A stretch of 64,000 nucleotides of DNA, taken from positions 1 to 64,000 of IMG/VR virus record IMGVR_UViG_3300028131_000823. One strand, 5' to 3'. The translations under genes were made by a program, and so were the position numbers. The notes below the pieces were generated by a model. That model was not told the DNA's origin and did not search any database. It saw nothing but the letters and a program-made list of their open reading frames with translations. Positions 8,955-63,859 of the stretch are shown piece by piece (the stretch's first letter is position 1; each line of letters opens with the position of its first letter).

Positions 8955-9389
8955 ATGCCAAAGACACCAATAGAATATACATATATGCAAGTTGCTTATC
9001 AATTTGCTAAATTAAGCTATGCTGAAAGAAGGCAAGTTGGATGTATTCTCGTTAAGAATGAACAAGTAATAAGTTTTGGCTATAATGGAACGCCAAGAGG
9101 ATTTAATAACACTTGTGAATTAGATAACACTACTAAACCTGAAGTGTTACATGCAGAATCTAATGCTATTACTAAAGTTGCCCAATCTACGATGGGGAGT
9201 GGCGGGGCGGAACTCTACACTACAACAGCCCCCTGTTTTAGTTGTTCAAAAATAATTATTCAATCTGGTATATCAAGAGTATATTATTCAGAAACATATA
9301 GGGATATGTCAGGTATAGAACTATTAGAACAAGCCAATATAGAAGTAATAAGAATAGAACCAATACACATGAATGGATCAAGTAAATAA
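8955..9389 (+). CDS. dCMP deaminase (ComEB/T4 cd family)
   Basis: RRQVGCILVK, GYNGTP, HAESNAI, PCFSC zinc motifs. Confidence 0.92.
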   Translation: MPKTPIEYTYMQVAYQFAKLSYAERRQVGCILVKNEQVISFGYNGTPRGFNNTCELDNTTKPEVLHAESNAITKVAQSTMGSGGAELYTTTAPCFSCSKIIIQSGISRVYYSETYRDMSGIELLEQANIEVIRIEPIHMNGSSK

Positions 9390-50708: not shown

Positions 50709-52208
50709 ATGGAGCTTACTCTCACAGAGAATAAACAATATTTAAGAGTTGATGAAGCATCTGAGCTTGAACTTGAACAACTAAACATATCACTAACTAA
50801 AAGAATCGACAGCTGGAGATTTAATCCTCTAGTAAAAAAAGGAATATGGGATGGGTACATTTCATATTTTAAAGATAATAAGTGGATTCCGGCAGGTTTA
50901 TGGAGATATGTTTATAATGTTTGTAAAGAATATAGATTTGAACTTAATATTAATGGCGTTAAAGAGCTGTTTGATAAGAATGTTACAGCATCTTATTTTG
51001 AGAAGTGGGCTTTGGCCTTCTTTGAAGGTTCAGAGATAACTCCTAGGGACTATCAAATAGAAGCTGCGTATAATATCCTTAAGTTTAGAAAGTGTCTTAG
51101 TGAACTTGCTACGTCTGCAGGAAAGACATTAATTAGTTTCCTTACAGTTGCTTATTTATTAGAACAAGAAAAGGCAAAGAAGATTTTATTCATTGTACCT
51201 AATGTTTCATTGGTTGTTCAAGCAACTGAAGATTTTTCAGACTATAATTATGCAAATAGGGTTAATATAAAAATTCAACAAATATTTAGTGGTAAAAAGA
51301 TTAGAGATGGTAGAAATGTAGTGATAGGTACATATCAATCTCTCGTTAAAAAGAAGCAAGAATATTTTGATCAGTTTGATGCTGTTATAATTGATGAGTG
51401 TCACAAAATGAAAAGCCAATCTATTAAAACAATCTTACAGAAATGTGTAAACGCAGAATATAGATATGGTCTTTCAGGTACAATTCCTAAAGACGGCACA
51501 TTAGATCGTTTAACATTGATGGCTTATACAGGTCCACTAATCAGTGAGGTGAGTGCTAGTTTCTTACAACAAGAGGGGTATATAGCAAATTGTAAGGTTA
51601 AAGTAATTGAAATGGATTATGCACCTGAAAGTGCTAAGAATGCCTTTACAGAAATGGCTCAAAACAGATATGAAAACAAGGACTTATTTCAATTAGAACA
51701 AAACTACATAATTAATTCAGAACCAAGATTAAATTTTATATGTAAGGTTATTGGTAAAATACCAAGAAATAGTCTTGTACTTTTTCATAGGATTGAACAT
51801 GGAAAAAAGGTTTATGAAAAACTTAGACAAGAAAGTAATAAAGCGGTCTATTATGTAGATGGCGGCACAGACAAGGATATTAGAGAAGAGTATAAGAAAA
51901 AGATGGAAGCTGGAGATGAGGTTGCAATCGTTGCAAGTTATGGTACATTCTCTACAGGTATATCAATTAAAAAAATTCACAATATCTTTTTTACAGAAAG
52001 TTTTAAGTCTGAGGTTATTATTAGACAATCAATTGGTAGAGGATTAAGACAACATCACTCTAAAAGTAGTGTTCTTATTATAGACTTTGTAGATGATTTG
52101 GCCACTACAGAATGGAGTAATTATTTAATGAAACACTCTAAAGCAAGACAATCAATATACAAAGAACAACAGTTTGAGTACAGTGTAAAGAAATTTCAAT
52201 TTGAGTGA
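50709..52208 (+). CDS. uvsW: UvsW-like SF2 DNA helicase
   Basis: PRDYQIEA, LATSAGKTLI, IVPNVSLVVQ, IIDECH, GLSGT, ASYGTFSTGISIK, QSIGRGLR. Confidence 0.92.
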   Translation: MELTLTENKQYLRVDEASELELEQLNISLTKRIDSWRFNPLVKKGIWDGYISYFKDNKWIPAGLWRYVYNVCKEYRFELNINGVKELFDKNVTASYFEKWALAFFEGSEITPRDYQIEAAYNILKFRKCLSELATSAGKTLISFLTVAYLLEQEKAKKILFIVPNVSLVVQATEDFSDYNYANRVNIKIQQIFSGKKIRDGRNVVIGTYQSLVKKKQEYFDQFDAVIIDECHKMKSQSIKTILQKCVNAEYRYGLSGTIPKDGTLDRLTLMAYTGPLISEVSASFLQQEGYIANCKVKVIEMDYAPESAKNAFTEMAQNRYENKDLFQLEQNYIINSEPRLNFICKVIGKIPRNSLVLFHRIEHGKKVYEKLRQESNKAVYYVDGGTDKDIREEYKKKMEAGDEVAIVASYGTFSTGISIKKIHNIFFTESFKSEVIIRQSIGRGLRQHHSKSSVLIIDFVDDLATTEWSNYLMKHSKARQSIYKEQQFEYSVKKFQFE

Positions 52209-52259
52209 TATTTAAGGTGATATATAATTATAATATAGTAATAAAAAAACATAATAAAA

Positions 52260-52994
52260 ATGGAAACACAAATTCAATCATTTGCTACATTTTCTGAAAC
52301 TAGAAAAGCAGCAATAGACACTAAGATAAAAGAAGAAGCGTCTACAAAGAGAACAACTGAAGCTCAAAGATTTGCTGACTTATTAGCTGAGTATGAAGTA
52401 ACCACTGTTGCTGAAATAGCTGAAGAACAAAGAACTGAATTTTTTGCTAAATTAGTTGGAGAAACTGATGAGGTAGAAACTGAAGGTAATGCATTTGGAG
52501 CAGCTGTTAAAAAAGCAAAAGAAGAAGATAAAGAAGAATTTAAAGTAGGCGGAGAAACTTACAAAGTAGAAGAATCAACAGTTACCGAAGCTAGAGCTAA
52601 ATATGTAAATACACAAAAAACAGTAGATGGTAATCCATTAATATCTTTTAATAGCTCCACTACTAGAGCTAAATGGATTGATGAAAATAAATCAAATGTT
52701 ATATCTGTACCTGATTCAACGGTTATTAATTCCGATCAAGGTAGAGTAGTAGGTTCTAGTAGAGGTCCTTATTACTTAATCGTAAAGGCAGATGTACTAG
52801 AAGAATCTAAAGTTGAAGAAGCTGAAGTTAAGTCTGATGAAGATTTTATGGAGATGGCTATGACAATGTATAAAGAAGCATTCGGTGATGATTTTGACGA
52901 GGCTAAAGCTAAAGAAGCTGCTGAAGGAATGTTAAAGAAAGCTGATGGAGACTATGGAGCTGCTGTAGGAATGTTACAATCATCTTTAGGATAA
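52260..52994 (+). CDS. Acidic internal-head/core-like protein with CTS-like N-terminus
   Basis: METQIQSFATFSE; several x-x-E^A/G sites (ETE^G, VTE^A, VEE^A); GATATATAA at 52219. Confidence 0.6.
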   Translation: METQIQSFATFSETRKAAIDTKIKEEASTKRTTEAQRFADLLAEYEVTTVAEIAEEQRTEFFAKLVGETDEVETEGNAFGAAVKKAKEEDKEEFKVGGETYKVEESTVTEARAKYVNTQKTVDGNPLISFNSSTTRAKWIDENKSNVISVPDSTVINSDQGRVVGSSRGPYYLIVKADVLEESKVEEAEVKSDEDFMEMAMTMYKEAFGDDFDEAKAKEAAEGMLKKADGDYGAAVGMLQSSLG

Positions 52995-53009
52995 AAATAA
53001 AATATAGAC

Positions 53010-54275
53010 ATGTTATTAACTTACGAACAATTTCTAGTCGAAAAGGCTCAGATAGTAGAGGGTAATTTGATTTTAGAAGGAGGAGCTGCAGGCCACATGC
53101 CTCATCCCTTTGACTATAATGATTTAACTTTCCAAGATTTTAAAACCATTGTTACAAATTCATTACAAGGTGAAATACATTTTGAAGAAGGACCTACTGA
53201 AAAAACAGATGGTCAAAACTTCTTTGTTACAGTAAAGGATGGTCAAGTTCTTTTCTCAAGAAACAAAGGGCAACTAATGGCACCTGTATCTTTAGATGGA
53301 GTTATTAAAATGTTCACGGGCCATGCATCAAAACTAGTAGAAGATACTTTTATCTATGCTGCAACAGATTTAGAAGCTGCATTATTAAGTTTAAGCGATC
53401 ACCAAGAATTTAACAATGGACAAAACTTTCTTAATATGGAGTTAATTTATTCTAAGAACCCTAATGTGATTAATTATGACAGAGATGTTATTCAATTTCA
53501 CGGCATGGCAGAAACTGATGGCAAAGGTAATATAGTTAACATGTCACAGCAAACAGGTGCAAAACTTGCAAGACTTCTTAAAGGTATAGAGGCAGATGTA
53601 CAAAAGACATTTACAATTATTCCTCCACAAATACTTAAACTTCAGAAAAACATAGATTTTGAAAAGAGACAAAGTTATTATCACAGTAAATTAAATGACT
53701 TAAGAGATGAGTTTAATTTATCAGACGGTGACGAAGTTAAAATGTATCATGAAGCATGGTGGAGAAGAGAAATTGAAAAAGATTTTGCAGATATTTCAAG
53801 TGATTTAAAAGAAGGTTTATTTTTAAGATGGGCATACAATGACAAGCAAACTATGAATATGGTTGCTATGAAAAAGATTGCTACTCCCGAACAAATGAAA
53901 AAAATCAAAGAGTTTGATAAGATAAAAGGTAAAAAGTATAAGCAGAATATTTTACCATTTGAAAACTTATTTTTAGAGTTAGGAAAAGATGTATTATTAA
54001 ATGCAAGTAATTTTGTTGCTGCAAATCCTGATTTAGAAAAGAAAAACTTACATGCTAAAATTAGAAAGGCAGCAGCTGACGTTAAACTTAACGGTGACTT
54101 AAAGCAAGTTGCTAAAATCGAAGCTGAATTAGAAAGATTAGAAAGTATTGGAGGTATCGAAGGTATTGTACCAACTGAGGGAATAGTCTTTAAATATAAA
54201 GGTAAGATTATGAAACTTACCGGCACATTTGCTGCAATTAATCAGCTTATGGGCATCATAAAATACGGAAGATAA
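53010..54275 (+). CDS. Ligase-superfamily nucleotidyltransferase-like protein with CTS-like N-terminus
   Basis: MLLTYEQFLVE, ILE^GGAAGH; motif I TEKTDG, SRNK, motif III LNMEL, motif IV EGIVF, motif V KIMKLTG. Confidence 0.6.
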   Translation: MLLTYEQFLVEKAQIVEGNLILEGGAAGHMPHPFDYNDLTFQDFKTIVTNSLQGEIHFEEGPTEKTDGQNFFVTVKDGQVLFSRNKGQLMAPVSLDGVIKMFTGHASKLVEDTFIYAATDLEAALLSLSDHQEFNNGQNFLNMELIYSKNPNVINYDRDVIQFHGMAETDGKGNIVNMSQQTGAKLARLLKGIEADVQKTFTIIPPQILKLQKNIDFEKRQSYYHSKLNDLRDEFNLSDGDEVKMYHEAWWRREIEKDFADISSDLKEGLFLRWAYNDKQTMNMVAMKKIATPEQMKKIKEFDKIKGKKYKQNILPFENLFLELGKDVLLNASNFVAANPDLEKKNLHAKIRKAAADVKLNGDLKQVAKIEAELERLESIGGIEGIVPTEGIVFKYKGKIMKLTGTFAAINQLMGIIKYGR

Positions 54276-54282
54276 ATATACT

Positions 54283-56241
54283 ATGATAATTAATTATAAT
54301 CAATTTATTTTAGAAAACGAAGATAAGGAATATGAGAAGTTAGATGCGAAAGCAGGTGACATGTCAAAAAAGTTAACCGATAAGGAGAGAGCACGTTATA
54401 AAGAATTAAGTAAAAAACATTTCCCAATAGTTATTAAAAAATTACCTGGAGATGTTTATGAAATTAAGACAGTAGGTTTAGGATATACAGGCCCACAAGG
54501 AGATGTGTTAGCAGAATATTATAGAGAAGAAATTTTAGCAAAGGTAAAAAATCCAAAAGGTATTCACATGGATATTAGAAGAAATGATGGAGGACAACAG
54601 GCTCCAGCTAAGGCAATATTGGATTTTTTTGTAGATACACCTAAAGACGAAGATGGAAATAGAAAAATTCCATTAGAACAACAAAGTAATTATTGGCCAA
54701 CTGATGAATGGACAGATGAAGATAGAGAAAGAGGTTATCAATCGAAGACTAATTATTTAGAAAGTAAAATAGAAGATAAGAATAAATTTACAAATATACC
54801 TACAGTGGTTTCCACAAGTGATTGGACATTTTCAGGAGGTGAATTCTTAACTGACACTATAAAAAACTTTGGCAAAGACAACATTACACACGTTGGCTCT
54901 AATTCAGGAGGAGGAGCAAATAGAACGTCACATACTGCCGACGACATGGCATCAACTTGGCCAGATGAAGATCCAAATGCTGAAGGATTATCAGTTGATG
55001 AAAAGTTAGAAAGATCAATGAAAGTATTTGAAAAGTTTTATGTAGATAAAGAAAAAGCCAAAGAATGTAGAGAAGCAGTTATGAAAGATCCTAGTAAATA
55101 TATTAAGGATGGAAAAATAAACGATAAAACAGTTCAAGACAAAATGCGTGAAATTACAAAAGATTTTCATGTAGCATATTTTACAAGAGAAGATGGAAAA
55201 ATTGAAGTAGCGACGCCTTATGGAAAATCTGATAGGATAGTAACTGATAAAGATGGTAAGCCATTTGGACCTCCTTATGAATTTAAAGGAAATTGGGAAG
55301 GAACAGGAACAGGAAATGCAGTACCAGGAATAGGAATTACAGAAACAGATCCAGATACTGCTAAAAACAGCGCATTAGAATTACTATATACAAAGACTGG
55401 TCAGAAAGATCAGCTTGAAAAAATGAAATCAAATCCAAAAGAATTTGGTCTTACTAAAGACGGCAAAGATGATTGGTATAAAAGAGGTACACTTGCAGAT
55501 AGAGAAGCAGGTAGAGAACATAATTACCCAGGATATGCAGCTGAAGGAAAACACCCTGAAATGTGGAAAGCTAGCCAAAAGGCAGCAAGTAAAAATATGA
55601 AAAACTGGAAAAGCATTCTTAAAAAAGCAGAGTCTAATAAAAATATAGATGATAAATCTAAACCAGAGCCTGAAAATTGGTGGGAAGAATACAGTGATGA
55701 AGCAAAGGCCAAATATATTAAAAAACACGGAGAGGCTCCAGACGTCGGTAATAAAGTAAAACCAACTAATGAAAATAAAAGAAATATTATGAAAAAGGTT
55801 AAACTATTTGAAGAATTCTTAAATGAATCAACAATGAATAATTTTAAACCCGAGGTATTGTCTAATAGAGATAAAGTAGATATGAAGCTTTTTAAAAGTT
55901 TAATGCCTAGAACTGCTAAAACGGTTAAAGACGCTGATCGTAGAATTCAAACATGGAAGGGTAATAAAATGTTTGTACATTATCAAGCATTTACAGTTCA
56001 ACCAAATGGTAATAAACCAGATTTACCAACATATAAGTTCCATAATTCACAATATTGGTTAAACGATACTCAATTAGGTTGGGCAGGTAGAGCAGGTGAA
56101 AAGGTAAACATCACTTTATTAACAATAACTGATGTAACTGATCCTGATAATGAAAAAATGTTAGGAGAACTTTATGTTAATACCGATACATATTTACAAG
56201 AACACAATATAGTATTTAACGAGTTAAAGAAAATATCATAA
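54283..56241 (+). CDS. CTS-bearing polyprotein-like ORF with S41 (tail-specific/C-terminal) peptidase domain
   Basis: MIINYNQFILE; HMDIRRNDGG resembles DLRxNxGG; VVSTSDWTFSGGE resembles TxSAAE; HVGSNSGGG resembles VGExTxG; NWEGTG; second CTS MKKVKLFEEFLNE at 55789. Confidence 0.65.
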   Translation: MIINYNQFILENEDKEYEKLDAKAGDMSKKLTDKERARYKELSKKHFPIVIKKLPGDVYEIKTVGLGYTGPQGDVLAEYYREEILAKVKNPKGIHMDIRRNDGGQQAPAKAILDFFVDTPKDEDGNRKIPLEQQSNYWPTDEWTDEDRERGYQSKTNYLESKIEDKNKFTNIPTVVSTSDWTFSGGEFLTDTIKNFGKDNITHVGSNSGGGANRTSHTADDMASTWPDEDPNAEGLSVDEKLERSMKVFEKFYVDKEKAKECREAVMKDPSKYIKDGKINDKTVQDKMREITKDFHVAYFTREDGKIEVATPYGKSDRIVTDKDGKPFGPPYEFKGNWEGTGTGNAVPGIGITETDPDTAKNSALELLYTKTGQKDQLEKMKSNPKEFGLTKDGKDDWYKRGTLADREAGREHNYPGYAAEGKHPEMWKASQKAASKNMKNWKSILKKAESNKNIDDKSKPEPENWWEEYSDEAKAKYIKKHGEAPDVGNKVKPTNENKRNIMKKVKLFEEFLNESTMNNFKPEVLSNRDKVDMKLFKSLMPRTAKTVKDADRRIQTWKGNKMFVHYQAFTVQPNGNKPDLPTYKFHNSQYWLNDTQLGWAGRAGEKVNITLLTITDVTDPDNEKMLGELYVNTDTYLQEHNIVFNELKKIS

Positions 56242-56252
56242 AATTATAAGAA

Positions 56253-58091
56253 ATGGCATTACAGGATTTAAGAACATATTATGAGTCAGTTGAAAAAGAG
56301 GATTTTAATAATCTCTTAGCACAGAAATGTTTAGTTACTGAAAAGATTCAAGCAAGTAGTCTTCATGTAAGAAGAGAAGATAGACTCTTAGAATTTTATA
56401 AATCAGGTAATAAGCAGGCTCTTAATAAAATAGATAGAACAATTGTTTCTTACTATGAAAAAGGTATAGGCCATTTTAAAGCATTATTAGACGAGACTAT
56501 TCAACAGATGCCAAGTGATTGGAAATTTGGATTTGATTATATGGTTAGTGAAAAGACAGTAGACATTGAATATGATACACTTCCAAAAAATAGTCTTATA
56601 TTAACACATATTCAAGTATTAAATGAAGACAGAACCCAGATTAAAAAAGTAATTAGAGATCCTAAGATTTTAGAAAAATGGGCTAATCTTTTAGAAGTTC
56701 AATCGCCTGAGGTTGTTTATGAAGGCATCCTTTCAGATCACCAAAAGGAAAAGTTAGTTAATATACTGAGCTTACAAGGAGAGCAAGCAAAAATAGAATT
56801 ACAAGATTTTGGTTTTTCTTATAGAGCATTTACAACATTTAACGAGTCAATTCATAAGTCAATGTTAAACAATGATATTCATAAAGACATTGATGGATTA
56901 GTTGTAAGTTTTGTAGAGGGCAAATCATTAAAGAACTTTAAACTACAGAGTCCATTAAAAGAAATTAAAGAACAAGAAGAAAGAAAGAGTTCGGATGCGT
57001 ATCAAATTACCGTAGTAAAACTTATTGAATATTTTAATGCGTTTGATTTTAGTGAAATACAACTTGAAAGTAAAGAAGTTGATGAGAGATATTTAGAATT
57101 AATGACAGCAGGTTTTAATTCATTTATAAAAGATAATGGAGCAAGCTTTATTGGCATGAATTTTGATAGCGCAGAGTTTGCAAACAATGAAGCATTTGAT
57201 TTAAATCCAAAAATGATAACAAATCAAGAAACTATTAGGCTTGTTAATGAATCAAGAGAAGTCGCAGAATTATTAAAAATAACATTAGGTACTTTTAGAA
57301 AGAAGAGACAGAAAGAAAATGGAGTTTTAGCAGGAGATGCATTTAATAGTTTAAACGGTATTATAGAAAAGATTGAAGCAAGAATTTACGAAAAAGTAGA
57401 GGAAGATAGTGTAATGGATTTTAAAACATTTAAAATTAACGATACACTTAAGGGACAAACAAATCCAATTAACGAAGGTTTAAAAGTAAACCATCCTGAA
57501 AGAGGAGCTAAAGAAGTTAATATGTTTGTTGGTAGGTTTCAGCCATTCACATTAGGACATGTTAAAGTCGTTGAACATTTGCATAAACAAAATGGACTTC
57601 CAACTGTTATATTTTTAGTTAAAGCTAAAAAGAAAAAGAAAGAAGACAGTTTTAAAAGACCATTTGATGAAACAATGCAGGTAAATATGATAAAACAGGT
57701 GATGAAGGAATATCCTATTGAGACAGTGTATGTTATAGATACCGCAGCAATTGACAAAATGTTTAATGCTATGAGACCTAAGTATGAACCTGTATTATGG
57801 GGAACAGGTAGTGATAGAATGAAAACATATGGCTATCAAGTTAATAACCCAAAATATAGAGGAGAATTAGGAGTTGAAGATAGCTTCAGATTAGAAGAAA
57901 TTCCAAGGACAGACGATAACATTAGTGCAACAAAGGTAAGAAACGCTTTATTAGATGGAGACGAAAAGACATATAAGTCCATGACTCCAAAATCTATGCA
58001 CAAAATGTATAAATTATTAAAACAAACAATGGAAGAAAGTGTTGAACTACAAGAACAAGTTTTAACATTTTCAGAATTTAAAAGCAAATAA
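56253..58091 (+). CDS. Fusion: RNA-ligase-like domain + TxGH nucleotidyltransferase (NMNAT/PPAT/cytidylyltransferase family)
   Basis: VTEKIQAS (degenerate motif I), DIDGLVVSF, NFKL; VGRFQPFTLGH, GTGSDR, ISATKVR; C-terminal VLTFSEFK. Confidence 0.75.
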   Translation: MALQDLRTYYESVEKEDFNNLLAQKCLVTEKIQASSLHVRREDRLLEFYKSGNKQALNKIDRTIVSYYEKGIGHFKALLDETIQQMPSDWKFGFDYMVSEKTVDIEYDTLPKNSLILTHIQVLNEDRTQIKKVIRDPKILEKWANLLEVQSPEVVYEGILSDHQKEKLVNILSLQGEQAKIELQDFGFSYRAFTTFNESIHKSMLNNDIHKDIDGLVVSFVEGKSLKNFKLQSPLKEIKEQEERKSSDAYQITVVKLIEYFNAFDFSEIQLESKEVDERYLELMTAGFNSFIKDNGASFIGMNFDSAEFANNEAFDLNPKMITNQETIRLVNESREVAELLKITLGTFRKKRQKENGVLAGDAFNSLNGIIEKIEARIYEKVEEDSVMDFKTFKINDTLKGQTNPINEGLKVNHPERGAKEVNMFVGRFQPFTLGHVKVVEHLHKQNGLPTVIFLVKAKKKKKEDSFKRPFDETMQVNMIKQVMKEYPIETVYVIDTAAIDKMFNAMRPKYEPVLWGTGSDRMKTYGYQVNNPKYRGELGVEDSFRLEEIPRTDDNISATKVRNALLDGDEKTYKSMTPKSMHKMYKLLKQTMEESVELQEQVLTFSEFKSK

Positions 58092-58092
58092 G

Positions 58093-59103
58093 ATGAGTAT
58101 AAGAACAGATTTTCAAATATTATTAAATAAAGCTATTAAAAGAGAAGATCTTTTAGTAGAAGGAAATATAGGTAAGTATCAATCACTAGGAAGTTTAAAT
58201 AATTTAAAGGCAAAGCAACAAATGTTTGACCTTATTAACAAAGATTATTTTAAAGGAAAATCTCCTTTTTCAAAGAGATTAACTTTAACAGAAATAGATG
58301 ATTCTACAATGCAAGAAGTTTTTACATTAATGAGTGAAGATATTGATGCAGCAAATACAATATTTAATTTAAAAAGAACAGGTATTGGTTCAGGTGAAAT
58401 ATTAATGGCATACCTTGTTGAAAACTTAGTAATAGGAGGAGGTAGTGCAGATGTAGACTTAAACTTATTCGATCCAAAGTCGGGTAAATTTTTAAGTGCT
58501 GGAATAGCAGAATTAAAAGAGGTTACAAGAACAAATGATGGTTTTTTAAAAGGTTGGAGAACAGGCGCAAGGCACGCTGCAATTAGAGCACAGGCTATTG
58601 CGGATATTAGAAATTTATATTTAGCAGTTAGGGATTCTATTACTGAATTAGACCCTACTACAAAGGCTGGTCAAGCTGCAGCAATAAGTGCAGCAAAAGG
58701 AGAATATTCAGCACTACTTAAATATTTTGAAGACCTAGATGCAATACCAGCAGCAGCTGATAGAGATTTTAAACTTAAACAAGGTACAAAAGGTGAAATA
58801 ATCGTAAAGTTTCAAGGGAATGTAATAGGTAATATTGGTGACGCAAAAACAATTTCAGAAATTAATAAGATTTTAAGTCAAGATGTTAATACGAATGTAA
58901 AAACTTATAGGCAAATCGAAGAAGAAGTGGCAAAAGGGTTTGGAGATATAGATGAAAAGTTTGTATTTATTAGAACTACAGGAAAATCTGAAAAGAAAAA
59001 GATACAAGGTATTTATTATAAGGAAAAATTACCTGATAATGCTAAAGAATTAAAAATATCAGAAGTCACTCAAAATACGATTAAAGTTAAAGTAAAAATT
59101 TGA
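58093..59103 (+). CDS. Putative PD-(D/E)xK nuclease-like protein
   Basis: GIGSGEILM...DVD...AELKEV pattern; N-terminal LLVE^G site. Confidence 0.4.
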   Translation: MSIRTDFQILLNKAIKREDLLVEGNIGKYQSLGSLNNLKAKQQMFDLINKDYFKGKSPFSKRLTLTEIDDSTMQEVFTLMSEDIDAANTIFNLKRTGIGSGEILMAYLVENLVIGGGSADVDLNLFDPKSGKFLSAGIAELKEVTRTNDGFLKGWRTGARHAAIRAQAIADIRNLYLAVRDSITELDPTTKAGQAAAISAAKGEYSALLKYFEDLDAIPAAADRDFKLKQGTKGEIIVKFQGNVIGNIGDAKTISEINKILSQDVNTNVKTYRQIEEEVAKGFGDIDEKFVFIRTTGKSEKKKIQGIYYKEKLPDNAKELKISEVTQNTIKVKVKI

Positions 59104-59138
59104 TATATAATAGATAGGACAAAAAATAAAGAAAAAAA

Positions 59139-61592
59139 ATGGCAACATTCGAAGAATTTTTAAACGAAAGAAATATAACTCTTAAAAGAAGATATACTGA
59201 ATCACACCCTTCCCAAACTGTAGGCAATTCAGCTAGAGTTAGAAATGCAATTATCGAAGCATTAAAGGATGGCAAAATAACAGTTGAAGAATTTAATAAT
59301 ATAGTTAGTCAACACTCTTCTGCTCCATCAAAATGGACAAGAGGTAATAAAAGATTTTTCAAAATAGAAGAAGATGGCGTAAGTCTTTCTAAATATGGAA
59401 CAAAAATATTAAATAGCTTAGTTACTGAATCTATAGATGAAGGTTTAAATAAGTCAGATGTTACATATCAATTAGCAATAGATTATACAGGTAGAACTAA
59501 GCCGAAAATTACTAAACTTAATAAGAAAAGACTTGAAATTAAGTACGGTTATAAAATTAGCCCAGAAACGGTAATTGATTCTATCAAGAAGGTTCATCCA
59601 GAAGTAGAACTTAAACATGTTGAATGGTCAGATAAAATGTCAGGTGGAGGTTTTCACATATTTGATATTTTAGAATCTGCAGTTACTGAAGGAACATATG
59701 ACTCAAAAGATCATATAGGATCTACATCAGATGGACAAGGTTCTAATGCTGAGATTTATAAAAAAGGTAGAGGATATTATGTAGTTGTTAGTGGAGAGTA
59801 TGATTATGACTTCGAGGCTAAGAATGACAAAGAACTAATAAATAAGTTAGAAGAATATGAATTTGATTCTTCTGATATTTTAGAATCAGCGATTAATAAT
59901 ATAGAAGAAAATATGATACATAATAATTTTAATGAATTCATTAATAAATCAATTAATGAAAATAACGTACAGGATTTAGATATGGAAGATATGAATCCTA
60001 AAATGGCTAAGCAGCTATTAAACATGGCTAGTAAACAATATAAAAACGAATTTCAAGGATCTTATACTGTAGATAAAGGAAATAAAAAAATGAGGTTTGA
60101 TACTTATAGTGCTTTATTAGCTATGGTAAAGCAAAAAGATTCTGGACCTTATGGTCCTTCATATGGTATTAATATTGGAGGAAATAATGAATTAGAAGAT
60201 TTTGAAGGTAATGTTTTAGGTAAGCTAAATGATAAATCATTATCAAGTGCAATTAGTAGTGTTGCAGCTGCTATGAAAATGGCAGCTAAAAACAGTAATG
60301 AATCAGTAGTTACTGAAGCCAGAGTAAGTGCAAAAAAGTTATTAAAATCAGTTGTAAATGGAGAAAGTAACTCAGTTGAAGGTATTAAACTTTCTAAAGA
60401 AATGGCCCAATCATTTTTAGAGTGGCTAGATCAATCAAGTTATGGTAGAAAATTTAGCGATCTTCCATTTGATAAATTATTTAGTGCAGCATTTAATTGG
60501 GGTATTGAAAGATATGCTAAAGACAATAAACTGAAAAATGAATTAAAAGATTTAAAAACAAAGGCAAAAACAATGAAAGAATCAAAAATATACGAAAGTT
60601 TCAGTGAATTTGTTAATGAATCTTTAGAACTTAATGAAGCATTAAAGAGTTCTAAACTTAGAGGACTTCTTACTATGAAAAGAGGTAGTAAGGCAATTTT
60701 AAAAGCAATTTATGGCTTTAGTAAAATAGAATTAGACAAAATAACAGATGATCAAATAATAGATATTGATCCTAAATTAGGTAAAAAAGCAGAAGGTTTA
60801 GTTGTTTATTATACAACTCAAGAAAAAGACAACCCTTATGCTGATACTTCAAAATCTACATATAATTCTGCTGGTAAAATTCCAGCAAATACAATACTTG
60901 CATTAGGTATGGGAAAAGACGTTGCATATGTTAAAAGAGATTATATTAAGAGAAAAATGACAATGTCTTTAACTACAGATCCTAGAAAATCATCTTATGA
61001 TATTGGAATTAATAAAGAGTATAGAGGCTGGGACGCATCCGGTATTTATAATGTAAAAAGAGTAATTGATGTTGCAGACGCTGCATTTGTAATTAATACT
61101 AACGCTCTTCCAAATACTAAAGGAAAAATTGAAGACAGAGTAAAAGCTAAAGAAGGTGCATTAGCATTTAAATCTGATAAGGAATTTAAAGATGCAAACA
61201 TAGCAAGATATAGAGAAATTCTACAAAAGAGAGCAAGTGAATTACCAATAGATAAATTAGTAGAAGATGCAATTGATGATGCAACTAAGGTTATGAAAGA
61301 TGGTTTAAAAAATCAAGAAAAAAATAAGTACGGAGAACTTATTGCAGGTGTAGGAAAGGACGGTAGAGCTTATAAATTAAATGACATTAGTAATTTTATA
61401 AATGGTTTAATTTCAGACTATGAAAGATGGTCAGGTTATATGGCAACAATTGAAGAGGCTGAAGCTAAATATGGTAAAGATTCTAGAGAATTTGAATGGG
61501 AAGCTAGATATTCTCAAAAAGAATCTGAGGAATACGCAAAGAGAATTAAAGATAAATTAGCTAAACTTAAGAAAAGAAACTTAGCTTGGTAA
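59139..61592 (+). CDS. 817 aa CTS-bearing polyprotein-like internal protein
   Basis: MATFEEFLNE; internal HNNFNEFINK and ESFSEFVNE; repeated IDE^G, VTE^G, VTE^A, LNE^A sites; GATATATAA at 59102. Confidence 0.65.
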   Translation: MATFEEFLNERNITLKRRYTESHPSQTVGNSARVRNAIIEALKDGKITVEEFNNIVSQHSSAPSKWTRGNKRFFKIEEDGVSLSKYGTKILNSLVTESIDEGLNKSDVTYQLAIDYTGRTKPKITKLNKKRLEIKYGYKISPETVIDSIKKVHPEVELKHVEWSDKMSGGGFHIFDILESAVTEGTYDSKDHIGSTSDGQGSNAEIYKKGRGYYVVVSGEYDYDFEAKNDKELINKLEEYEFDSSDILESAINNIEENMIHNNFNEFINKSINENNVQDLDMEDMNPKMAKQLLNMASKQYKNEFQGSYTVDKGNKKMRFDTYSALLAMVKQKDSGPYGPSYGINIGGNNELEDFEGNVLGKLNDKSLSSAISSVAAAMKMAAKNSNESVVTEARVSAKKLLKSVVNGESNSVEGIKLSKEMAQSFLEWLDQSSYGRKFSDLPFDKLFSAAFNWGIERYAKDNKLKNELKDLKTKAKTMKESKIYESFSEFVNESLELNEALKSSKLRGLLTMKRGSKAILKAIYGFSKIELDKITDDQIIDIDPKLGKKAEGLVVYYTTQEKDNPYADTSKSTYNSAGKIPANTILALGMGKDVAYVKRDYIKRKMTMSLTTDPRKSSYDIGINKEYRGWDASGIYNVKRVIDVADAAFVINTNALPNTKGKIEDRVKAKEGALAFKSDKEFKDANIARYREILQKRASELPIDKLVEDAIDDATKVMKDGLKNQEKNKYGELIAGVGKDGRAYKLNDISNFINGLISDYERWSGYMATIEEAEAKYGKDSREFEWEARYSQKESEEYAKRIKDKLAKLKKRNLAW

Positions 61593-62098
61593 TGAACGAA
61601 AACGTTACACCAGCAAATATTGGAGGTATGGGAAATCCTGCCTTTCCACAAGGTGGAGAAGTAGGAAGTGGAGATGTGCCAGCTGGTAAAGGAGATGCTA
61701 AGAAAGAGCAAAAGAAAAAGAAGAAAGAAAGAGAAGAATATCTTAAAAATAGAAAAGAAGAAATGGTACATACTACATTTAGTGGATTTATAAATGAAGC
61801 TAAAATTAAAGATGCTAGAAAAGATTTAGGCTATATTGCATTTCTTGAAGAAATGGCAGAAATTAATAATAGAGACATTCAAAACGCATATGATGTTGCA
61901 CTAAAAGTTTTACAAGATAAAGGTATGAGTGAAAAGGAAGCAATTGGATTTTTAAACTCACCACATGGAAAGTATATGGCAGAATATTTAATTCCAGGTC
62001 AAGATTATAGTCATGAAGCATTCTTAGACAAATTAGATGAATACTATAACGAAAGAATGTTGAAACAATATGCAAAGGATTTTAAAAACCTAGCATAA
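61592..62098 (+). CDS. Hypothetical protein with internal CTS-like motif (likely start ATG 61592)
   Basis: TAATG overlap; MNENVTPANIGGMG...VGSGD; internal MVHTTFSGFINE^A at 61763. Confidence 0.6.
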   Translation: MNENVTPANIGGMGNPAFPQGGEVGSGDVPAGKGDAKKEQKKKKKEREEYLKNRKEEMVHTTFSGFINEAKIKDARKDLGYIAFLEEMAEINNRDIQNAYDVALKVLQDKGMSEKEAIGFLNSPHGKYMAEYLIPGQDYSHEAFLDKLDEYYNERMLKQYAKDFKNLA

Positions 62099-62120
62099 GA
62101 ATAAGTTAGTATTTATAATT

Positions 62121-62154
62121 AAAACCCAAGTTCTCGCAGATCTTGGGTTTTTTT
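62121..62154 (+). terminator. Intrinsic terminator
   Basis: AAAACCCAAG/CTTGGGTTTT 10 bp stem plus T tract. Confidence 0.8.
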
Positions 62155-62243
62155 GTTAATAACTTTAGTAAAAAAGTTGCCTCAAAATTTTCACGGGTCA
62201 AAGATTATAGTTATATTAGTATTATAATTAAAACTTAAACTAG
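62153..62243 (+). promoter_or_regulatory. Conserved ~90 bp upstream element, copy 3 (putative early promoter)
   Basis: 52 bp identical to copy 2. Confidence 0.8.
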
Positions 62244-62519
62244 ATGAGCTATACAAATTTTAACAGACATGAATCAATGAATTCAGAAACTAGAAAAGAA
62301 ATCATGAACTTAATTAATGATTTAATAAATTACGATGAACAAATAGATAAAAAATTAAGAAGATCTATTGAAAACAAATTATATGGTTTATTTGATGGTT
62401 ATTTATATGATAAACTTCAATTGAATGCATTAGAATGTCCAAGTGATTTAGCAAGTAGAATTATGAAAATATATCATAAATGTGCAATGTACCCAAAGTC
62501 AAAAACAATTATATTTTAA
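62244..62519 (+). CDS. Hypothetical protein (putative early gene)
   Basis: 91 aa directly behind conserved element copy 3. Confidence 0.7.
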   Translation: MSYTNFNRHESMNSETRKEIMNLINDLINYDEQIDKKLRRSIENKLYGLFDGYLYDKLQLNALECPSDLASRIMKIYHKCAMYPKSKTIIF

Positions 62520-62557
62520 TCTGATATATAATATAATATTAAAAATAAAATAACAAG

Positions 62558-62980
62558 ATGAACAATATTAAGAATTTTAACGACTTTATTAATGAGTCTC
62601 AAGAAATAAACGAAGGTACTCGTTCTCAATTTGGAAAAATTGATAAAAAAGGAAATATAACTTCAGTTTATATGCATTATGATGGTTATCCAGAAAACGT
62701 ATTACCTATTTTAAGAAAAGGTTATAAAGGTGGAAAAAATGTAGATTATGTACTTTCACAAGGAAGTGGTTCAGGTCTTGAAGTAAATCCTAAGAAAATT
62801 AACTTTTATAAAGATGATAGAGATTCTCAATCAACTGGTAATGTTGCAACAATTGCAAATTATTTATCAGATGTAGAAGATGATGGTGGAGCAGAATACG
62901 TTTATTTATGGGATGAAAGATCAAAGCAATGGATGATGGCATCTTATGGTGAAAGAGACTTAAAGGTTGCAGAAGTTTAA
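62558..62980 (+). CDS. CTS-bearing hypothetical protein (YxHYDGYP family)
   Basis: MNNIKNFNDFINE, INE^G, VYMHYDGYP, AEYVYLW; GATATATAA at 62523. Confidence 0.7.
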   Translation: MNNIKNFNDFINESQEINEGTRSQFGKIDKKGNITSVYMHYDGYPENVLPILRKGYKGGKNVDYVLSQGSGSGLEVNPKKINFYKDDRDSQSTGNVATIANYLSDVEDDGGAEYVYLWDERSKQWMMASYGERDLKVAEV

Positions 62981-62996
62981 AAAAATTAAAGTAACA

Positions 62997-63308
62997 ATGA
63001 AAAACGTAAAATTATTCGAAGAATTTATAAACGAAGATATTGACTCAAATAAAATATTTGAATTAACTGAACTAGAAAAAAAAATTAATGGCTTTACAGG
63101 CCAAGCACAGGTAAAAGCTAAAGTTGGAGTAACGACATTTTCTGTTTCAAAATACATGATAGTGTTTGATTATGACGAAGCTAATAAAGATTTACCATTT
63201 GTATTTAGACCAGATATGAAATCTGCAAAAGTAGCAAAGGATAAATTAGAAAAAACTGACATGTTTACTCCTGAAATGAACTTAAGAATTGAAGAAATTA
63301 AATATTAA
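62997..63308 (+). CDS. CTS-bearing hypothetical protein (likely start ATG 62997)
   Basis: MKNVKLFEEFINE. Confidence 0.7.
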   Translation: MKNVKLFEEFINEDIDSNKIFELTELEKKINGFTGQAQVKAKVGVTTFSVSKYMIVFDYDEANKDLPFVFRPDMKSAKVAKDKLEKTDMFTPEMNLRIEEIKY

Positions 63309-63326
63309 AATTAAAAAAACAAAGTT

Positions 63327-63782
63327 ATGAAAAATATAAAATTATTCGAAGAGTTTATCAATGAAAACGATATGATGGCTACAACGCCAGCAGAACTTAA
63401 AAAAATGGCTAAAAAATTTAAACAAATCCATTATGACATGGCCTCCGGTGATTTTGAAGAGGAAGATATAGATGCAAACTTTAAATTTATAACAGACTTT
63501 CTTGGAACAGACCAAATAGTTGAAATAGTTGGAGGAGACCATTGGGCTAATCATTCTTCTGGAAAAGAATTAACAGACATTTATAATGATTTAATCACTA
63601 AGATTAAAAACAAGAAAGACCATGAATTAGATTCAGGAGCAGACTATGTTACAGGTACATTAAATGGAGCAAAGGTAGTTTGTCAATACGATGGTTACAG
63701 TACCCCTACTCATTTATCAATTATGATAAACGTTAATGACATTAAAAAGTTTGACATTAAAACAACACCTTTTGTAGTTTAA
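63327..63782 (+). CDS. CTS-bearing hypothetical protein
   Basis: MKNIKLFEEFINE. Confidence 0.7.
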   Translation: MKNIKLFEEFINENDMMATTPAELKKMAKKFKQIHYDMASGDFEEEDIDANFKFITDFLGTDQIVEIVGGDHWANHSSGKELTDIYNDLITKIKNKKDHELDSGADYVTGTLNGAKVVCQYDGYSTPTHLSIMINVNDIKKFDIKTTPFVV

Positions 63783-63827
63783 TATTAGGAAGGTATCATT
63801 AAAAAGTTAATAACTAATTAGTAATTT

Positions 63828-63859
63828 AAAGGAGATTGTATGAAACAATCTCCTTTTTT
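63828..63859 (+). terminator. Intrinsic terminator overlapping a class-2 promoter
   Basis: AAAGGAGATTGT/ACAATCTCCTTT perfect 12 bp stem plus T tract; AAAC 63843 + N16 + ATATAAG 63863. Confidence 0.75.

What the first reader, a model, noticed from the sequence alone, without database searches (positions are those of the whole stretch)
53010..58091. Two ligase-fold nucleotidyltransferases plus a TxGH nucleotidyltransferase in the payload: possible RNA/NAD repair counter-defence
Seen: 53010-54275 has covalent nucleotidyltransferase motifs (EKTDG, SRNK, ME, EGIVF, K). 56253-58091 has a degenerate ligase domain (EKIQA, DGLVV) joined via an INE^G linker to GRFQPFTLGH...ISATKVR. Known: KxDG ligases such as T4 Rnl1 repair tRNA cut by anticodon nucleases. 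GRFQP-x-(H/T)-x-GH is the NMNAT/NadM/PPAT family signature, and phage NAD-reconstitution pathways use NMNAT-like enzymes against NAD-depleting defences. Inference: an injected module that repairs host-defence damage to RNA or to the NAD pool, or that nucleotidylates a protein or nucleic acid target. The substrate cannot be determined from sequence.
Basis: partly seen in the sequence, partly recalled or inferred. Interest (0 to 1): 0.75.

Follow-up and report, generated by a model that had tools for sequence, protein, structure and literature searches.

The report
Phage RNA-ligase pair with adenylyltransferase partner
An uncultured marine T4-like phage carries two extra RNA-ligase-type enzymes and an NMNAT-like adenylyltransferase that always travel together in related phages, often fused to RNA-repair domains, and some carry a T4-style capsid-targeting leader, so this is probably an undescribed and possibly injected RNA-repair kit.

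Summary

- **ORF1 (53010-54275)** is a ligase-fold covalent nucleotidyltransferase. Its KxDG lysine and motifs Ia, III, IV and V are invariant in the family. It has a ~180-residue helical insert and matches no Pfam or PHROG family.
- **ORF3 (56253-58091)** is a T4 Rnl2-like ligase (invariant Lys31; some relatives have a canonical EKIDGSS motif I). It is fused to a HIGH-superfamily nucleotidyltransferase that most resembles archaeal NMNAT.

The new result is linkage. In IMG/VR, close relatives have ORF1 followed directly by the ORF3-type gene. In distant relatives the ORF1 domain is fused to a HIGH nucleotidyltransferase in one protein. Other fusion partners are Pnk-type kinase, HD, CCA-adding and 2H domains. 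This points to RNA end-healing and sealing, not stand-alone NAD salvage: no Nampt was found, and NMNAT model scores fall far below cut-off.

ORF1 and ORF2 start with a leader like the T4 internal-protein capsid-targeting sequence. The genome encodes a T4-type prohead protease. A leader-bearing cytidylyltransferase of cyanophage S-CREM2 was detected in purified virions. Packaging is therefore plausible but unproven here.

The substrate and the nucleotidyltransferase's role remain unknown. I class this as a new variant of a known kind.

The parts
53010..54275 (+). ORF1, 421 aa: stand-alone member of an unnamed ligase-fold covalent nucleotidyltransferase family (sister to Pfam DUF6267)
   Evidence: No Pfam, PHROG or NCBIfam hit. 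There are 1723 relatives among 50%-identity cluster representatives. Model pLDDT is 86.9 and all of the top 45 structural matches are RNA or DNA ligases.
53010..53042 (+). ORF1 N-terminal leader MLLTYEQFLVE, resembling the T4 capsid-targeting sequence and ending in an (L/I)xE site
   Evidence: T4 IPII/IPIII begin MKTYQEFIAE. The motif is conserved in ORF1 orthologues although flanking residues vary. Residues 1-27 have pLDDT below 50, so they lie outside the fold. Across the genome 16 of 256 ORFs carry it versus 3.4 expected.
53199..53213 (+). ORF1 motif I EKTDG (Lys65, the predicted AMP-accepting nucleophile)
   Evidence: K65, D67 and G68 are invariant in alignment A2.
53622..54164 (+). ORF1 helical insert (about aa 205-385) between nucleotidyltransferase motifs IIIa and IV
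   Evidence: DSSP on the model shows helices 217-380. Structural alignments to ligases cover about 185-197 residues drawn from both ends of the protein, 22-415.
54177..54224 (+). ORF1 motifs IV-V (EGIVF...K..KLTG)
   Evidence: G391 and K402 are invariant; E390, F394, G398, T404 and G405 are nearly invariant.
54283..56241 (+). ORF2, 652 aa: variable insert between ORF1 and ORF3. It is a two-module protein with an N-terminal leader (MIINYNQFILE) and a second, internal leader. It is not part of the nucleotidyltransferase trio.
   Evidence: The S41 peptidase signal is weak (E 8.6e-5, below cut-off; Atlas score 0.87). In most relatives ORF1 and ORF3 are 0-50 nt apart. In the 99%-identical relative L017 only the C-terminal module is present, as a separate 156-aa gene.
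55789..55827 (+). Internal leader copy MKKVKLFEEFLNE inside ORF2 (aa 503-515), marking a fused module boundary
   Evidence: In L017 the same module starts a separate gene.
56253..57392 (+). ORF3 N-terminal part (aa 1-380): divergent T4 Rnl2-like RNA ligase, comprising the nucleotidyltransferase domain and a helical C-domain
   Evidence: Foldseek finds T4 Rnl2 (2hvr/2hvq) at E 2.6e-7 to 4e-6 over 367-377 columns, then Trl1 and REL1. The nearest Atlas clusters carry PF09414 RNA_ligase and T4_Rnl2_C. Pfam itself gives no hit.
56340..56360 (+). ORF3 motif I EKIQASS (Lys31)
   Evidence: E30, K31, A34, S35 and S36 are invariant. The T4 Rnl2 sequence reads EKIHGTN at the same distance from its N-terminus. 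Relatives have EKIDGSS, EKIQGSS and EKINGSS.
56892..56945 (+). ORF3 motifs IV-V (DGLVV ... KNFKL)
   Evidence: D214 is nearly invariant; K227, F229 and K230 are invariant. The motif assignment comes from comparison by eye with the T4 Rnl2 sequence and is an inference.
57414..57479 (+). Disordered linker holding a leader-like motif (VMDFKTF; invariant M388, F390) and the conserved SP(I/V)xE(G/A) site (PINE|G)
   Evidence: M388 and P405 are invariant and F390 and E408 nearly so. pLDDT is below 50 for 381-388 and 397-408. Use as a protease site is an inference.
57510..58046 (+). ORF3 C-terminal HIGH-superfamily nucleotidyltransferase domain (aa 420-598) with GRFQPFTLGH (57531-57560) and ISATKVR (57921-57941)
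   Evidence: PF01467 hits at E 4e-8. phrog_3041 and phrog_395 'cytidyltransferase' also hit. Structural matches: 1f9a NMNAT Z 14.9, with NadM, NadD and PPAT at Z 13-15. NMNAT equivalog scores are far below cut-off.
58062..58079 (+). Conserved C-terminal tail motif LTFSEF, i.e. (L/M)TFxxF
   Evidence: It is present at the C-terminus of both the 610-aa fused forms and the 420-aa ligase-only forms of the family.
52260..52994 (+). ORF0, 244 aa: conserved upstream neighbour with the C-terminal motif GDYGAAVG.LQSSLG; function unknown
   Evidence: The same C-terminal motif ends the gene upstream of ORF1 in L017, L020, L055 and L058.
59139..61592 (+). ORF5, 817 aa: conserved downstream neighbour with the leader MATFEEFLNE and an internal leader copy; function unknown
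   Evidence: orthologues in L017, L020, L055 and L058.

Best explanation
ORF1 and ORF3 form a nucleic-acid end-sealing module of a marine T4-like myovirus.

**Components.** ORF1 is a member of a large, unnamed, phage-restricted family of ATP-type (KxDG) RNA-ligase-fold enzymes. ORF3 is a divergent Rnl2-like nick-sealing ligase fused to a HIGH-superfamily adenylyltransferase. The phage also has a canonical DNA ligase, so the set parallels T4's gp30 + Rnl1 + Rnl2.

**Likely job.** The most likely role is repair of RNA (tRNA or rRNA) cut by host defence nucleases. Each ligase would self-adenylylate on its motif I lysine, transfer AMP to a 5'-phosphate end, and seal it to a 3'-OH.

**Role of the HIGH nucleotidyltransferase.** It is an obligatory partner of the ligase, not a free-standing NAD-salvage enzyme. 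Its chemistry is AMP transfer from ATP to a phosphate acceptor. That fits either making a dinucleotide cofactor for the ligation pathway or adenylylating a phosphorylated end.

**Delivery.** ORF1 and the neighbouring ORF2 and ORF5 carry a T4-type capsid-targeting leader ending in an (L/I)xE protease site. At least part of the set is therefore probably loaded into the prohead, trimmed by the gp21-type protease, and delivered with the DNA.

**Shown:** folds, catalytic motifs, family-wide linkage, leader enrichment. **Inferred:** RNA as substrate, the counter-defence role, the partner function of the nucleotidyltransferase, and packaging.
For: **Ligase folds and motifs:**

**Linkage of ligase and HIGH nucleotidyltransferase:**
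- Among 79 IMG/VR loci, 40 of 45 stand-alone ORF1 genes have an ORF3-type gene within 6 kb downstream, usually 0-50 nt away. Four of the five exceptions run out of contig within 2.5 kb of ORF1. In 26 of 34 more distant relatives the ORF1 domain and a HIGH nucleotidyltransferase lie in one ORF.
- 106 of 127 cluster representatives of at least 560 aa carry the G(R/G/K)FxP..H motif, mostly at residues 9-40.
- Phage Mel-JY01 has a fused protein, and huge phage LR756500 has the adjacent pair.
- In cyanomyoviruses S-TIM4 and S-SSM4 a DUF6267 KxDG protein sits directly upstream of the cytidyltransferase.

**RNA-repair fusion partners:** AAA_33/Zeta kinase, HD, PolyA_pol/CCA-adding enzyme and 2H. P0384 reads leader-nucleotidyltransferase-DUF5661-AAA_33-HD-CCA-ligase. 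AAA_33 is also the kinase family of Pnkp-type kinase-phosphatase-ligase proteins.

**A canonical DNA ligase lies elsewhere in the genome**.

**Leader:**
- T4 IPII/IPIII start MKTYQEFIAE.
- 16 of 256 ORFs carry the motif versus 3.4 expected, P 4e-7.
- 40 of 141 family representatives carry it versus 2 expected.
- The S77 prohead protease and gp23 are present.
- In relatives the fused gene sits next to TerL-portal-protease.
- S-CREM2 gp154 starts MKNFSSFLTE and was found in CsCl-purified virions by mass spectrometry (PMC10665884).
Against: - There is no biochemical data for any member. The only cultured phage with the ORF1 family is Microcystis phage Mel-JY01.
- Sequence-level links to known ligase families are weak. 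Pfam does not hit ORF1 or the ORF3 N-domain, profile searches of PDB sequences find no ligase, and hhalign finds nothing.
- Foldseek E-values for ORF1 are only about 0.01, and VIA Z of 9 is close to the tool's stated background of 7-8. What carries the argument is that every top hit is a ligase.
- The genes sit behind replication genes (gp32, primase, UvsW). They have no T4-type late promoter, and a sigma70-like site lies upstream. That fits early expression better than late packaging.
- ORF3 has no N-terminal leader.
- The S-CREM2 detection rests on 3 peptides, and its authors note that carry-over is possible. gp154 is too divergent for my nucleotidyltransferase profile.
- No kinase or phosphatase end-healing gene lies next to ORF1/ORF3. 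The only AAA_33 kinase is at 148 kb.
- The complex prediction of ORF1 with the nucleotidyltransferase domain gave no answer.
Confidence: 0.55

Rival explanations
1. NAD+ reconstitution. The ORF3 C-domain is a true NMN adenylyltransferase that rebuilds NAD+ after depletion by Thoeris, SIR2, DSR or similar defences. The ligase-fold domains are accessory or unrelated.
For: The best sequence and structure matches are archaeal NMNAT and NadM. The GRFQPF and IS.T..R signatures are present. phrog_3462 NMNAT hits at E 2e-5. Authors working on cyanophage homologues speculate on NAD+ control (PMC10665884).
Against: Scores of 35-36 bits fall far below the NMNAT equivalog cut-offs of 127-181. PPAT and NadD match almost as well, at Z 13-14. 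No Nampt is found in the 205-kb record, which is however only about 75% complete. The nucleotidyltransferase is fused or adjacent to a ligase domain in essentially every relative, not to Nampt or Nudix. The first His of HxGH is Thr in the whole ORF3 family.
Confidence: 0.15
2. DNA transactions. The two enzymes seal nicks in DNA or RNA-primed DNA, either during replication and recombination or in the injected genome. The (L/M)TFxxF tail would be a docking motif for a replisome protein such as the sliding clamp, rather than a capsid-targeting signal.
For: The genes lie directly after gp32, primase and UvsW here, after UvsW in L004, and between gp41 and gp61 in S-TIM4. Rnl2-type enzymes act on duplex nicks (established knowledge). 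Three of 49 ORF1 relatives weakly hit the NAD-dependent DNA ligase adenylation domain. From my own recollection, not checked here, short hydrophobic-x-x-F motifs at protein ends also serve as clamp-binding peptides in T4-like phages.
Against: A canonical ATP-dependent DNA ligase is present at 114365-114943. Fusion to a CCA-adding enzyme and a 2H phosphoesterase is RNA-specific. RNA ligases outrank DNA ligases in the structure comparison, Z 8-9.4 versus 5-7. No gp45-type clamp was detected with PF02916, though the control search was also silent, so this is uninformative.
Confidence: 0.15
3. Target nucleotidylation. One or more of the three domains AMPylates, or otherwise nucleotidylates, a host protein or nucleic acid as an injected effector, without any ligation.
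For: Leader-bearing proteins of T-even phages are diverse host-directed effectors (PMC3012670). The ORF3 motif I departs from KxDG.
Against: The full ligase motif set I-V is conserved in ORF1. Motifs IV and V serve the later ligation steps (established knowledge). Canonical KxDG occurs in ORF3 relatives. The fusion partners are end-healing enzymes.
Confidence: 0.07
4. Virion assembly helper. Like T4 Rnl1 (gp63), which also promotes tail-fibre attachment, ORF1 would serve mainly in morphogenesis.
For: From my own knowledge, T4 gp63 has a dual role. The window's tail and baseplate genes lie upstream on the same strand.
Against: The catalytic motifs are invariant across more than 1700 clusters. 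Linkage is to the nucleotidyltransferase and RNA-repair domains, not to fibre genes.
Confidence: 0.03

Closest known systems
T4 RNA ligase 2 (Rnl2, gp24.1; PF09414) and the RNA-editing ligases
   Same: The ORF3 N-part has the same fold over nucleotidyltransferase plus C-domain (Foldseek E 2.6e-7). Its EK-x-x-(G/A)-S/T-x motif I lies at the same distance from the N-terminus, and the motif III/IV acids and motif V lysines are conserved.
   Different: There is no Pfam-level sequence match. Motif I reads K-I-Q-A-S. A HIGH nucleotidyltransferase is fused at the C-terminus, and there is a conserved (L/M)TFxxF tail.
T4 Pnkp + Rnl1 and bacterial Pnkp (kinase-phosphatase-ligase) RNA repair systems
   Same: ORF1-type domains sit at the C-terminus of proteins that carry AAA_33 kinase, HD phosphohydrolase, 2H and CCA-adding domains. 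That is the same healing-then-sealing logic, with the same kinase family as Pnkp.
   Different: The ligase domain belongs to a different, unnamed family with a 180-residue helical insert. A HIGH nucleotidyltransferase is the constant partner, which known systems lack. In this window no healing enzyme is adjacent.
Naegleria gruberi RNA ligase (Rnl5) and fungal Trl1 ligase domain
   Same: These are the best structural matches to the ORF1 nucleotidyltransferase core (Z 9.4 and 8.8, about 185-197 residues).
   Different: Identity is only 13-14%. ORF1 has no N-terminal OB-like or C-terminal helical domain of those enzymes. It has an internal insert and an N-terminal GGAxGHMxHPFD element instead.
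Pfam DUF6267 + 'cytitidyltransferase' gene pair of T4-like cyanophages
   Same: A KxDG ligase-like protein lies immediately upstream of a leader-bearing HIGH nucleotidyltransferase. ORF1's nearest Atlas clusters carry DUF6267. The ORF3 nucleotidyltransferase hits 317 phage records, mostly these cyanophage genes.
   Different: ORF1 does not match the DUF6267 model. Here the nucleotidyltransferase is fused to a second, Rnl2-like ligase. As far as my searches show, the cyanophage pair is itself uncharacterised.
Archaeal NMNAT (MJ0541, MTH150) and NadM
   Same: Same Rossmann HIGH fold, with GRFQPF-x-x-GH and IS-x-T-x-x-R motifs; Z 14.9.
   Different: Thr replaces the first His. Equivalog cut-offs are missed by about 100 bits. 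There is no NAD-salvage context, and the domain is bound to ligase domains.
T4 internal proteins IPI-III and Alt (capsid-targeting sequence, gp21 processing); 'polyvalent proteins' of phages (Iyer et al. 2017, PMC5512222)
   Same: There is an N-terminal leader of the MKTYQEFIAE type ending in (L/I)xE, and a T4-type S77 protease in the genome. Relatives are multi-domain proteins encoded next to head genes.
   Different: The cargo here would be ligases and a nucleotidyltransferase. The polyvalent-protein survey states that its 2H domains were never seen with RNA ligases. Packaging is unproven for this phage.

Membership tests
Covalent nucleotidyltransferase superfamily (ATP/NAD ligases, capping enzymes) - ORF1 | Nucleotidyltransferase fold | tested here: met
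   All of the top 45 VIA-align matches are ligases, Z up to 9.4. The top ~43 Foldseek hits are likewise ligases, although E is only about 0.01.
Covalent nucleotidyltransferase superfamily - ORF1 | Motif I KxDG lysine plus motifs Ia, III, IV and V | tested here: met
   K65, D67, G68, R84, E144, G391 and K402 are invariant and E390 is nearly invariant. Assignment of III, IV and V to structural positions is inferred.
Covalent nucleotidyltransferase superfamily - ORF1 and ORF3-N | Formation of a covalent enzyme-(Lys)-NMP intermediate | not testable with these tools
   Requires a biochemical assay.
T4 Rnl1 family (PF09511) | Match to the family model | tested here: not met
   No Pfam hit at E up to 0.1. 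Structural TM to Rnl1-family clusters is only 0.41.
Pfam DUF6267 (PF19782) | Match to the family model | tested here: not met
   No match in the genome at E up to 10 or in the Pfam scan. The model itself works: cyanophage S-TIM4 ORF_183 scores E 3e-88. The relationship rests only on Atlas features and structure.
Rnl2 family (PF09414) - ORF3 N-part | Match to the family model | tested here: not met
   No Pfam hit and no PF09414 hit in the genome at E up to 0.1. hhalign against T4 Rnl2 finds nothing.
Rnl2 family - ORF3 N-part | Rnl2-like fold including the C-terminal domain, and a motif I lysine in an EKxxGxx context | tested here: met
   Foldseek E 2.6e-7 over 367 columns to 2hvr. K31 is invariant and relatives have EKIDGSS. 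The nearest Atlas clusters carry PF09414 and T4_Rnl2_C.
HIGH (cytidylyltransferase-like, PF01467) nucleotidyltransferases - ORF3 C-part | Family model match, (H/T)xGH motif and ISxTxxR motif | tested here: met
   33.9 bits against a cut-off of 21. TLGH and ISATKVR are present. Z 13-15 to NMNAT, NadD and PPAT.
NMN adenylyltransferase (archaeal NMNAT / NadM equivalogs) | Score above the curated equivalog cut-off | tested here: not met
   34.8 bits versus 181 (TIGR01527); 36.4 versus 127 (NF002243); 27.9 versus 409 (NadM).
Phage NAD+ reconstitution pathways (Nampt + NMNAT type) | Partner Nampt/NAPRTase gene in the genome | tested here: not met
   PF04095 is absent from the 205-kb record. The record is about 75% complete, so absence is not proven.
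T4-type capsid-targeted internal proteins | N-terminal targeting motif like MKTYQEFIAE, ending in (L/I)xE | tested here: met
   Met for ORF1, ORF2 and ORF5. Not met for the ORF3 N-terminus, which is part of the fold.
T4-type capsid-targeted internal proteins | gp21-type (S77) prohead protease encoded by the phage | tested here: met
   PF03420 hit at 85723-86073 of the genome, 44.8 bits. The gp23 capsid protein lies next to it.
T4-type capsid-targeted internal proteins | Presence in the virion and N-terminal trimming | not testable with these tools
   Support is indirect only: S-CREM2 gp154, a leader-bearing cytidylyltransferase, was detected by virion mass spectrometry (PMC10665884).
Pnkp-type RNA repair system | End-healing kinase and phosphatase linked to the ligase | tested here: inconclusive
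   They are fused in some relatives. In this genome the only AAA_33 kinase is 90 kb away, and none is adjacent to ORF1 or ORF3.

The most novel reading that the evidence does not exclude
A very large, phage-only class of head-packaged 'RNA-repair polyproteins' exists, with more than 1700 clusters at 50% identity. In it a HIGH-superfamily adenylyltransferase is a mechanistic partner of an RNA ligase. It might regenerate a dinucleotide cofactor for the ligase, or directly adenylylate phosphorylated ends. The enzymes would be injected with the genome so that repair capacity is present before any phage gene is expressed. This window shows the unfused form: ORF1 plus an Rnl2-nucleotidyltransferase fusion.
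Probability: 0.2. Interest if true: 0.85.

Novelty: new variant of a known kind. Interest (0 to 1): 0.66.

Why it matters
Phage RNA repair is known mainly from T4 Pnkp/Rnl1. The role of T4 Rnl2 is still unclear, and so is the role of the 'cytidyltransferase' conserved in hundreds of marine cyanophages.

This locus ties these threads together. It links an abundant uncharacterised ligase-fold family (with its sister family DUF6267), an Rnl2-like ligase and the cyanophage-type nucleotidyltransferase into one conserved module. Fusions to kinase, HD and CCA-adding domains give the module a testable function.

If the T4-like leaders do direct packaging, marine phages would deliver repair enzymes with their DNA. 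That would be a new class of injected counter-defence cargo. It would also provide new ligases and adenylyltransferases of possible practical use.

Tried and rejected
- **Sequence links to known ligases.** ORF1 versus ORF3 by BLASTP and by profile-profile comparison showed no detectable relationship. Profile searches of PDB sequences with A2 and A1 found no ligase; A2 gave only a spurious eS6 match, and A1 matched only nucleotidyltransferase-domain proteins. hhalign of the ORF3 family against T4 Rnl2 found nothing.
- **DUF6267 membership of ORF1:** not met.
- **Complex prediction** of ORF1 with the ORF3 nucleotidyltransferase domain returned 'no answer' and is not used as evidence.
- **Late promoter.** TATAAATA occurs 15 times versus 19.8 expected, with none upstream of ORF0-ORF5. 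The sigma70 and terminator scan was not above shuffles, apart from one strong terminator at 63828-63856.
- **'Missing DNA ligase' idea:** rejected, because a PF01068 ligase exists at 114 kb.
- **Clamp search** with PF02916 was uninformative.
- **NAD-salvage context:** no Nampt.
- **ORF2 as part of the trio:** rejected, because it is absent or much shorter between ORF1 and ORF3 in relatives.
- **Literature.** Searches for DUF6267, for Mel-JY01, and for an RNA ligase plus cytidylyltransferase combination found no paper. Burroughs and Aravind 2016 is not held in the library.

Full report
**Context.** The window is the first 64 kb of a 204,977-bp IMG/VR viral contig (30.8% G+C, CheckV about 75% complete, host unknown). 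Nearly all genes are on the + strand. Baseplate, tail and fibre genes fill 13-46 kb. A RuvC-like resolvase, gp32, primase and a UvsW helicase follow at 47-52 kb. The genome also encodes a T4-type prohead protease (PF03420) and the gp23 capsid protein at 85-89 kb, a canonical ATP-dependent DNA ligase at 114 kb, and seven tRNAs. It is therefore a distant T4-like marine myovirus. Close protein relatives come from Tara, ENA and JGI marine metagenomes.

**ORF1 (421 aa).**
- It has no Pfam, PHROG, NCBIfam or PDB sequence match.
- It has 1723 relatives among representatives of 50%-identity clusters.
- In a 49-sequence alignment at 34-58% identity, the invariant positions are exactly those expected of a covalent nucleotidyltransferase: K65-x-D67-G68, R84, E144, G391 and K402, with E390 nearly invariant. 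There is also an N-terminal G24/H29/H32 element.
- The AlphaFold model is confident (pLDDT 86.9, pTM 0.83) except for residues 1-27.
- Foldseek E-values are weak (about 0.01), but the first ~43 hits are all RNA or DNA ligases.
- VIA-align gives Z 9.4 to Naegleria RNA ligase, 8.8 to Trl1 ligase, 8.4 to REL1, 7.9 to T4 Rnl2 and Rnl1, and 5-7 to DNA ligases. These alignments use residues from both ends of the protein.
- A helical module of about 180 residues is inserted between them.
- Five of 49 relatives weakly hit PF09414 RNA_ligase.

**ORF3 (612 aa).**
- Its N-terminal 380-400 residues are Rnl2-like. The best Foldseek hits are T4 Rnl2 structures (E 2.6e-7, 367 columns), then Trl1 and REL1. 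The nearest ESM Atlas clusters carry PF09414 and T4_Rnl2_C.
- The T4 Rnl2 sequence reads EKIHGTN at residues 34-40. ORF3 reads EKIQASS at 30-36, with E30, K31, A34, S35 and S36 invariant.
- Relatives read EKIDGSS, EKIQGSS and EKINGSS. This is a drifting but genuine motif I, so 'degenerate' overstates the case.
- Residues 420-598 are a HIGH-superfamily nucleotidyltransferase: PF01467 at E 4e-8, GRFQPFTLGH, ISATKVR, and Z 14.9 to M. jannaschii NMNAT. NadM, NadD and PPAT follow closely at Z 13-15.
- Scores against curated NMNAT models are about 100 bits below their cut-offs.

**Linkage (the main new result).**
- The ORF1 domain is usually the C-terminal module of longer proteins.
- Of 127 representatives of at least 560 aa, 106 carry the G(R/G/K)FxP..H motif, mostly within the first 40 residues. 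Pfam finds CTP_transf_like in 15 of 39 sampled.
- In 79 IMG/VR loci the pattern is binary. Close relatives have a stand-alone ORF1 followed by an ORF3-type gene: 40 of 45, usually 0-50 nt apart; four of the five exceptions run out of contig within 2.5 kb. More distant relatives have the ORF1 domain and the nucleotidyltransferase in one ORF: 26 of 34.
- The same theme occurs in Microcystis phage Mel-JY01 (fused), in huge phage LR756500 (adjacent), and in T4-like cyanophages. There a DUF6267 protein with a KWDG motif (E 3e-88) sits immediately upstream of the conserved 'cytitidyltransferase'.
- The ORF3 nucleotidyltransferase domain detects that cyanophage gene in 317 phage records.
- The nucleotidyltransferase is therefore a partner of a ligase-fold enzyme throughout, which argues against a free-standing NAD-salvage role. 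No Nampt was found.

**Function.**
- Other domains fused to the ORF1 domain are AAA_33/Zeta-type kinase, HD, PolyA_pol/CCA-adding enzyme with its RNA-binding domain, 2H phosphoesterase and DUF5661.
- One 1930-aa protein reads leader - nucleotidyltransferase - DUF5661 - AAA_33 - HD - CCA-adding - ligase domain.
- AAA_33 is also the kinase family of Pnkp-type kinase-phosphatase-ligase proteins.
- These are the parts list of RNA end-healing and sealing, and of tRNA 3'-end repair. With a canonical DNA ligase elsewhere, ORF1 and ORF3 parallel T4's Rnl1 and Rnl2.
- I conclude, by inference, that the module repairs broken RNA, most plausibly damage from host defence nucleases.
- The nucleotidyltransferase's task is open. 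Its family chemistry is AMP transfer to a phosphate acceptor. That is compatible with making a dinucleotide used in the pathway, or with adenylylating a phosphorylated end. Neither was testable here.

**The 'payload' idea.**
- T4 IPII and IPIII start MKTYQEFIAE and IPI starts MKTFKEF. This capsid-targeting sequence is the only feature shared by the diverse T-even internal proteins (PMC3012670).
- ORF1 (MLLTYEQFLVE), ORF2 (MIINYNQFILE), ORF5 (MATFEEFLNE) and several small ORFs at 62.5-63.8 kb carry the same motif ending in (L/I)xE. One ORF at 176 kb reads MKTYEEFINE.
- In the whole genome 16 of 256 ORFs have it in the first 20 residues against 3.4 expected (P 4e-7).
- It is conserved in ORF1 orthologues and enriched at the N-termini of the fused family: 40 of 141 against 2 expected.
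- Internal copies preceded by Met mark fused modules in ORF2, in ORF5 and in two 680-aa proteins. In a 99%-identical relative the C-terminal module of ORF2 is a separate gene.
- Cyanophage cytidyltransferases start with the same leader. S-CREM2 gp154 (MKNFSSFLTE) was detected in CsCl-purified virions, and its authors note frequent detection of such proteins in cyanophage virions but also possible carry-over (PMC10665884).
- In relatives the fused gene lies just upstream of TerL, portal and prohead protease.
- ORF3 has no N-terminal leader, because its N-terminus belongs to the Rnl2-like fold. However, two leader-like motifs flank its nucleotidyltransferase domain: VMxFxT(F/Y) with invariant M388, and the C-terminal (L/M)TFxxF. 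Ligase-only forms keep both.
- The conserved SP(I/V)xE(G/A) linker fits a gp21-type site, but ORF3 has 13 [LI]xE tripeptides, so cleavage there is only a possibility.
- Against packaging: the genes follow replication genes, there is no late-promoter motif, and a sigma70-like site precedes ORF0.

**Verdict.** The module is a new variant of known phage RNA-repair and injected-protein themes. My literature searches found no description of the ORF1 family, of DUF6267 function, or of the ligase-nucleotidyltransferase pairing. A key 2016 survey could not be read, so prior description cannot be excluded.

Noticed in passing
window 52260-63856 (ORF0 to the terminator at 63828-63856): A possible single transcription unit. 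It runs from a sigma70-like site at 52201-52234 to a strong stem-loop terminator at 63828-63856, and holds 6 of the genome's 16 leader-bearing ORFs. ORF0 (C-terminal GDYGAAVG.LQSSLG) and ORF5 (leader MATFEEFLNE, then a conserved RRYTE..HP box) are syntenic with ORF1/ORF3 in relatives and have no known function.
   Followed up: partly
window 54283-56241 (ORF2); genome 132449-134491 and 141388-143430: Several large proteins contain internal copies of the leader preceded by Met (for example MKKVKLFEEFLNE and MKNLETLESFINE). They look like in-frame fusions of leader-plus-module units. The two 680-aa proteins may be paralogues; this was not tested.
   Followed up: partly
window 54283-56241, aa 84-211 of ORF2: Weak similarity to S41 (C-terminal processing) peptidases: Pfam E 8.6e-5, just under cut-off, and Atlas score 0.87. 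This is a lead only.
   Followed up: partly
window 61586-62098: Residues 75-164 of this 170-aa ORF match residues 24-113 of P0242 (phmmer E 5e-4). P0242 is a 525-aa protein that carries the ORF1-type ligase domain, so this small domain is another occasional fusion partner.
   Followed up: no
L012 (cyanophage S-TIM4) 3860-4789; L013 (S-SSM4) 1336-2259: Pfam DUF6267 proteins of cyanomyoviruses carry a KWDG motif. By Atlas features and structure they are relatives of ORF1, which suggests DUF6267 is an unrecognised ligase-fold family. Both records annotate a non-ATG start.
   Followed up: partly
genome 148278-149640: A cluster of an AAA_33 kinase, an unknown 212-aa ORF and a second CTP_transf_like gene. 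A third CTP_transf_like gene lies at 122648-123028. Relatives place PfkB, glycosyltransferase and CTP_transf genes next to the fused ligase gene (L009, L010).
   Followed up: no
window 35618-41320 and 32010-35558: Very large ORFs (1900 and 1182 aa) matching only PHROGs of unknown function. They lie next to a collagen-like fibre protein (41322-43313) and are probably tail fibre or baseplate components.
   Followed up: no
L055 and L058, about 7400-10500: In some relatives the Rnl2-like gene is a protein of 1026-1034 aa with motif I EKLSGSS. Its extra domains were not examined.
   Followed up: no
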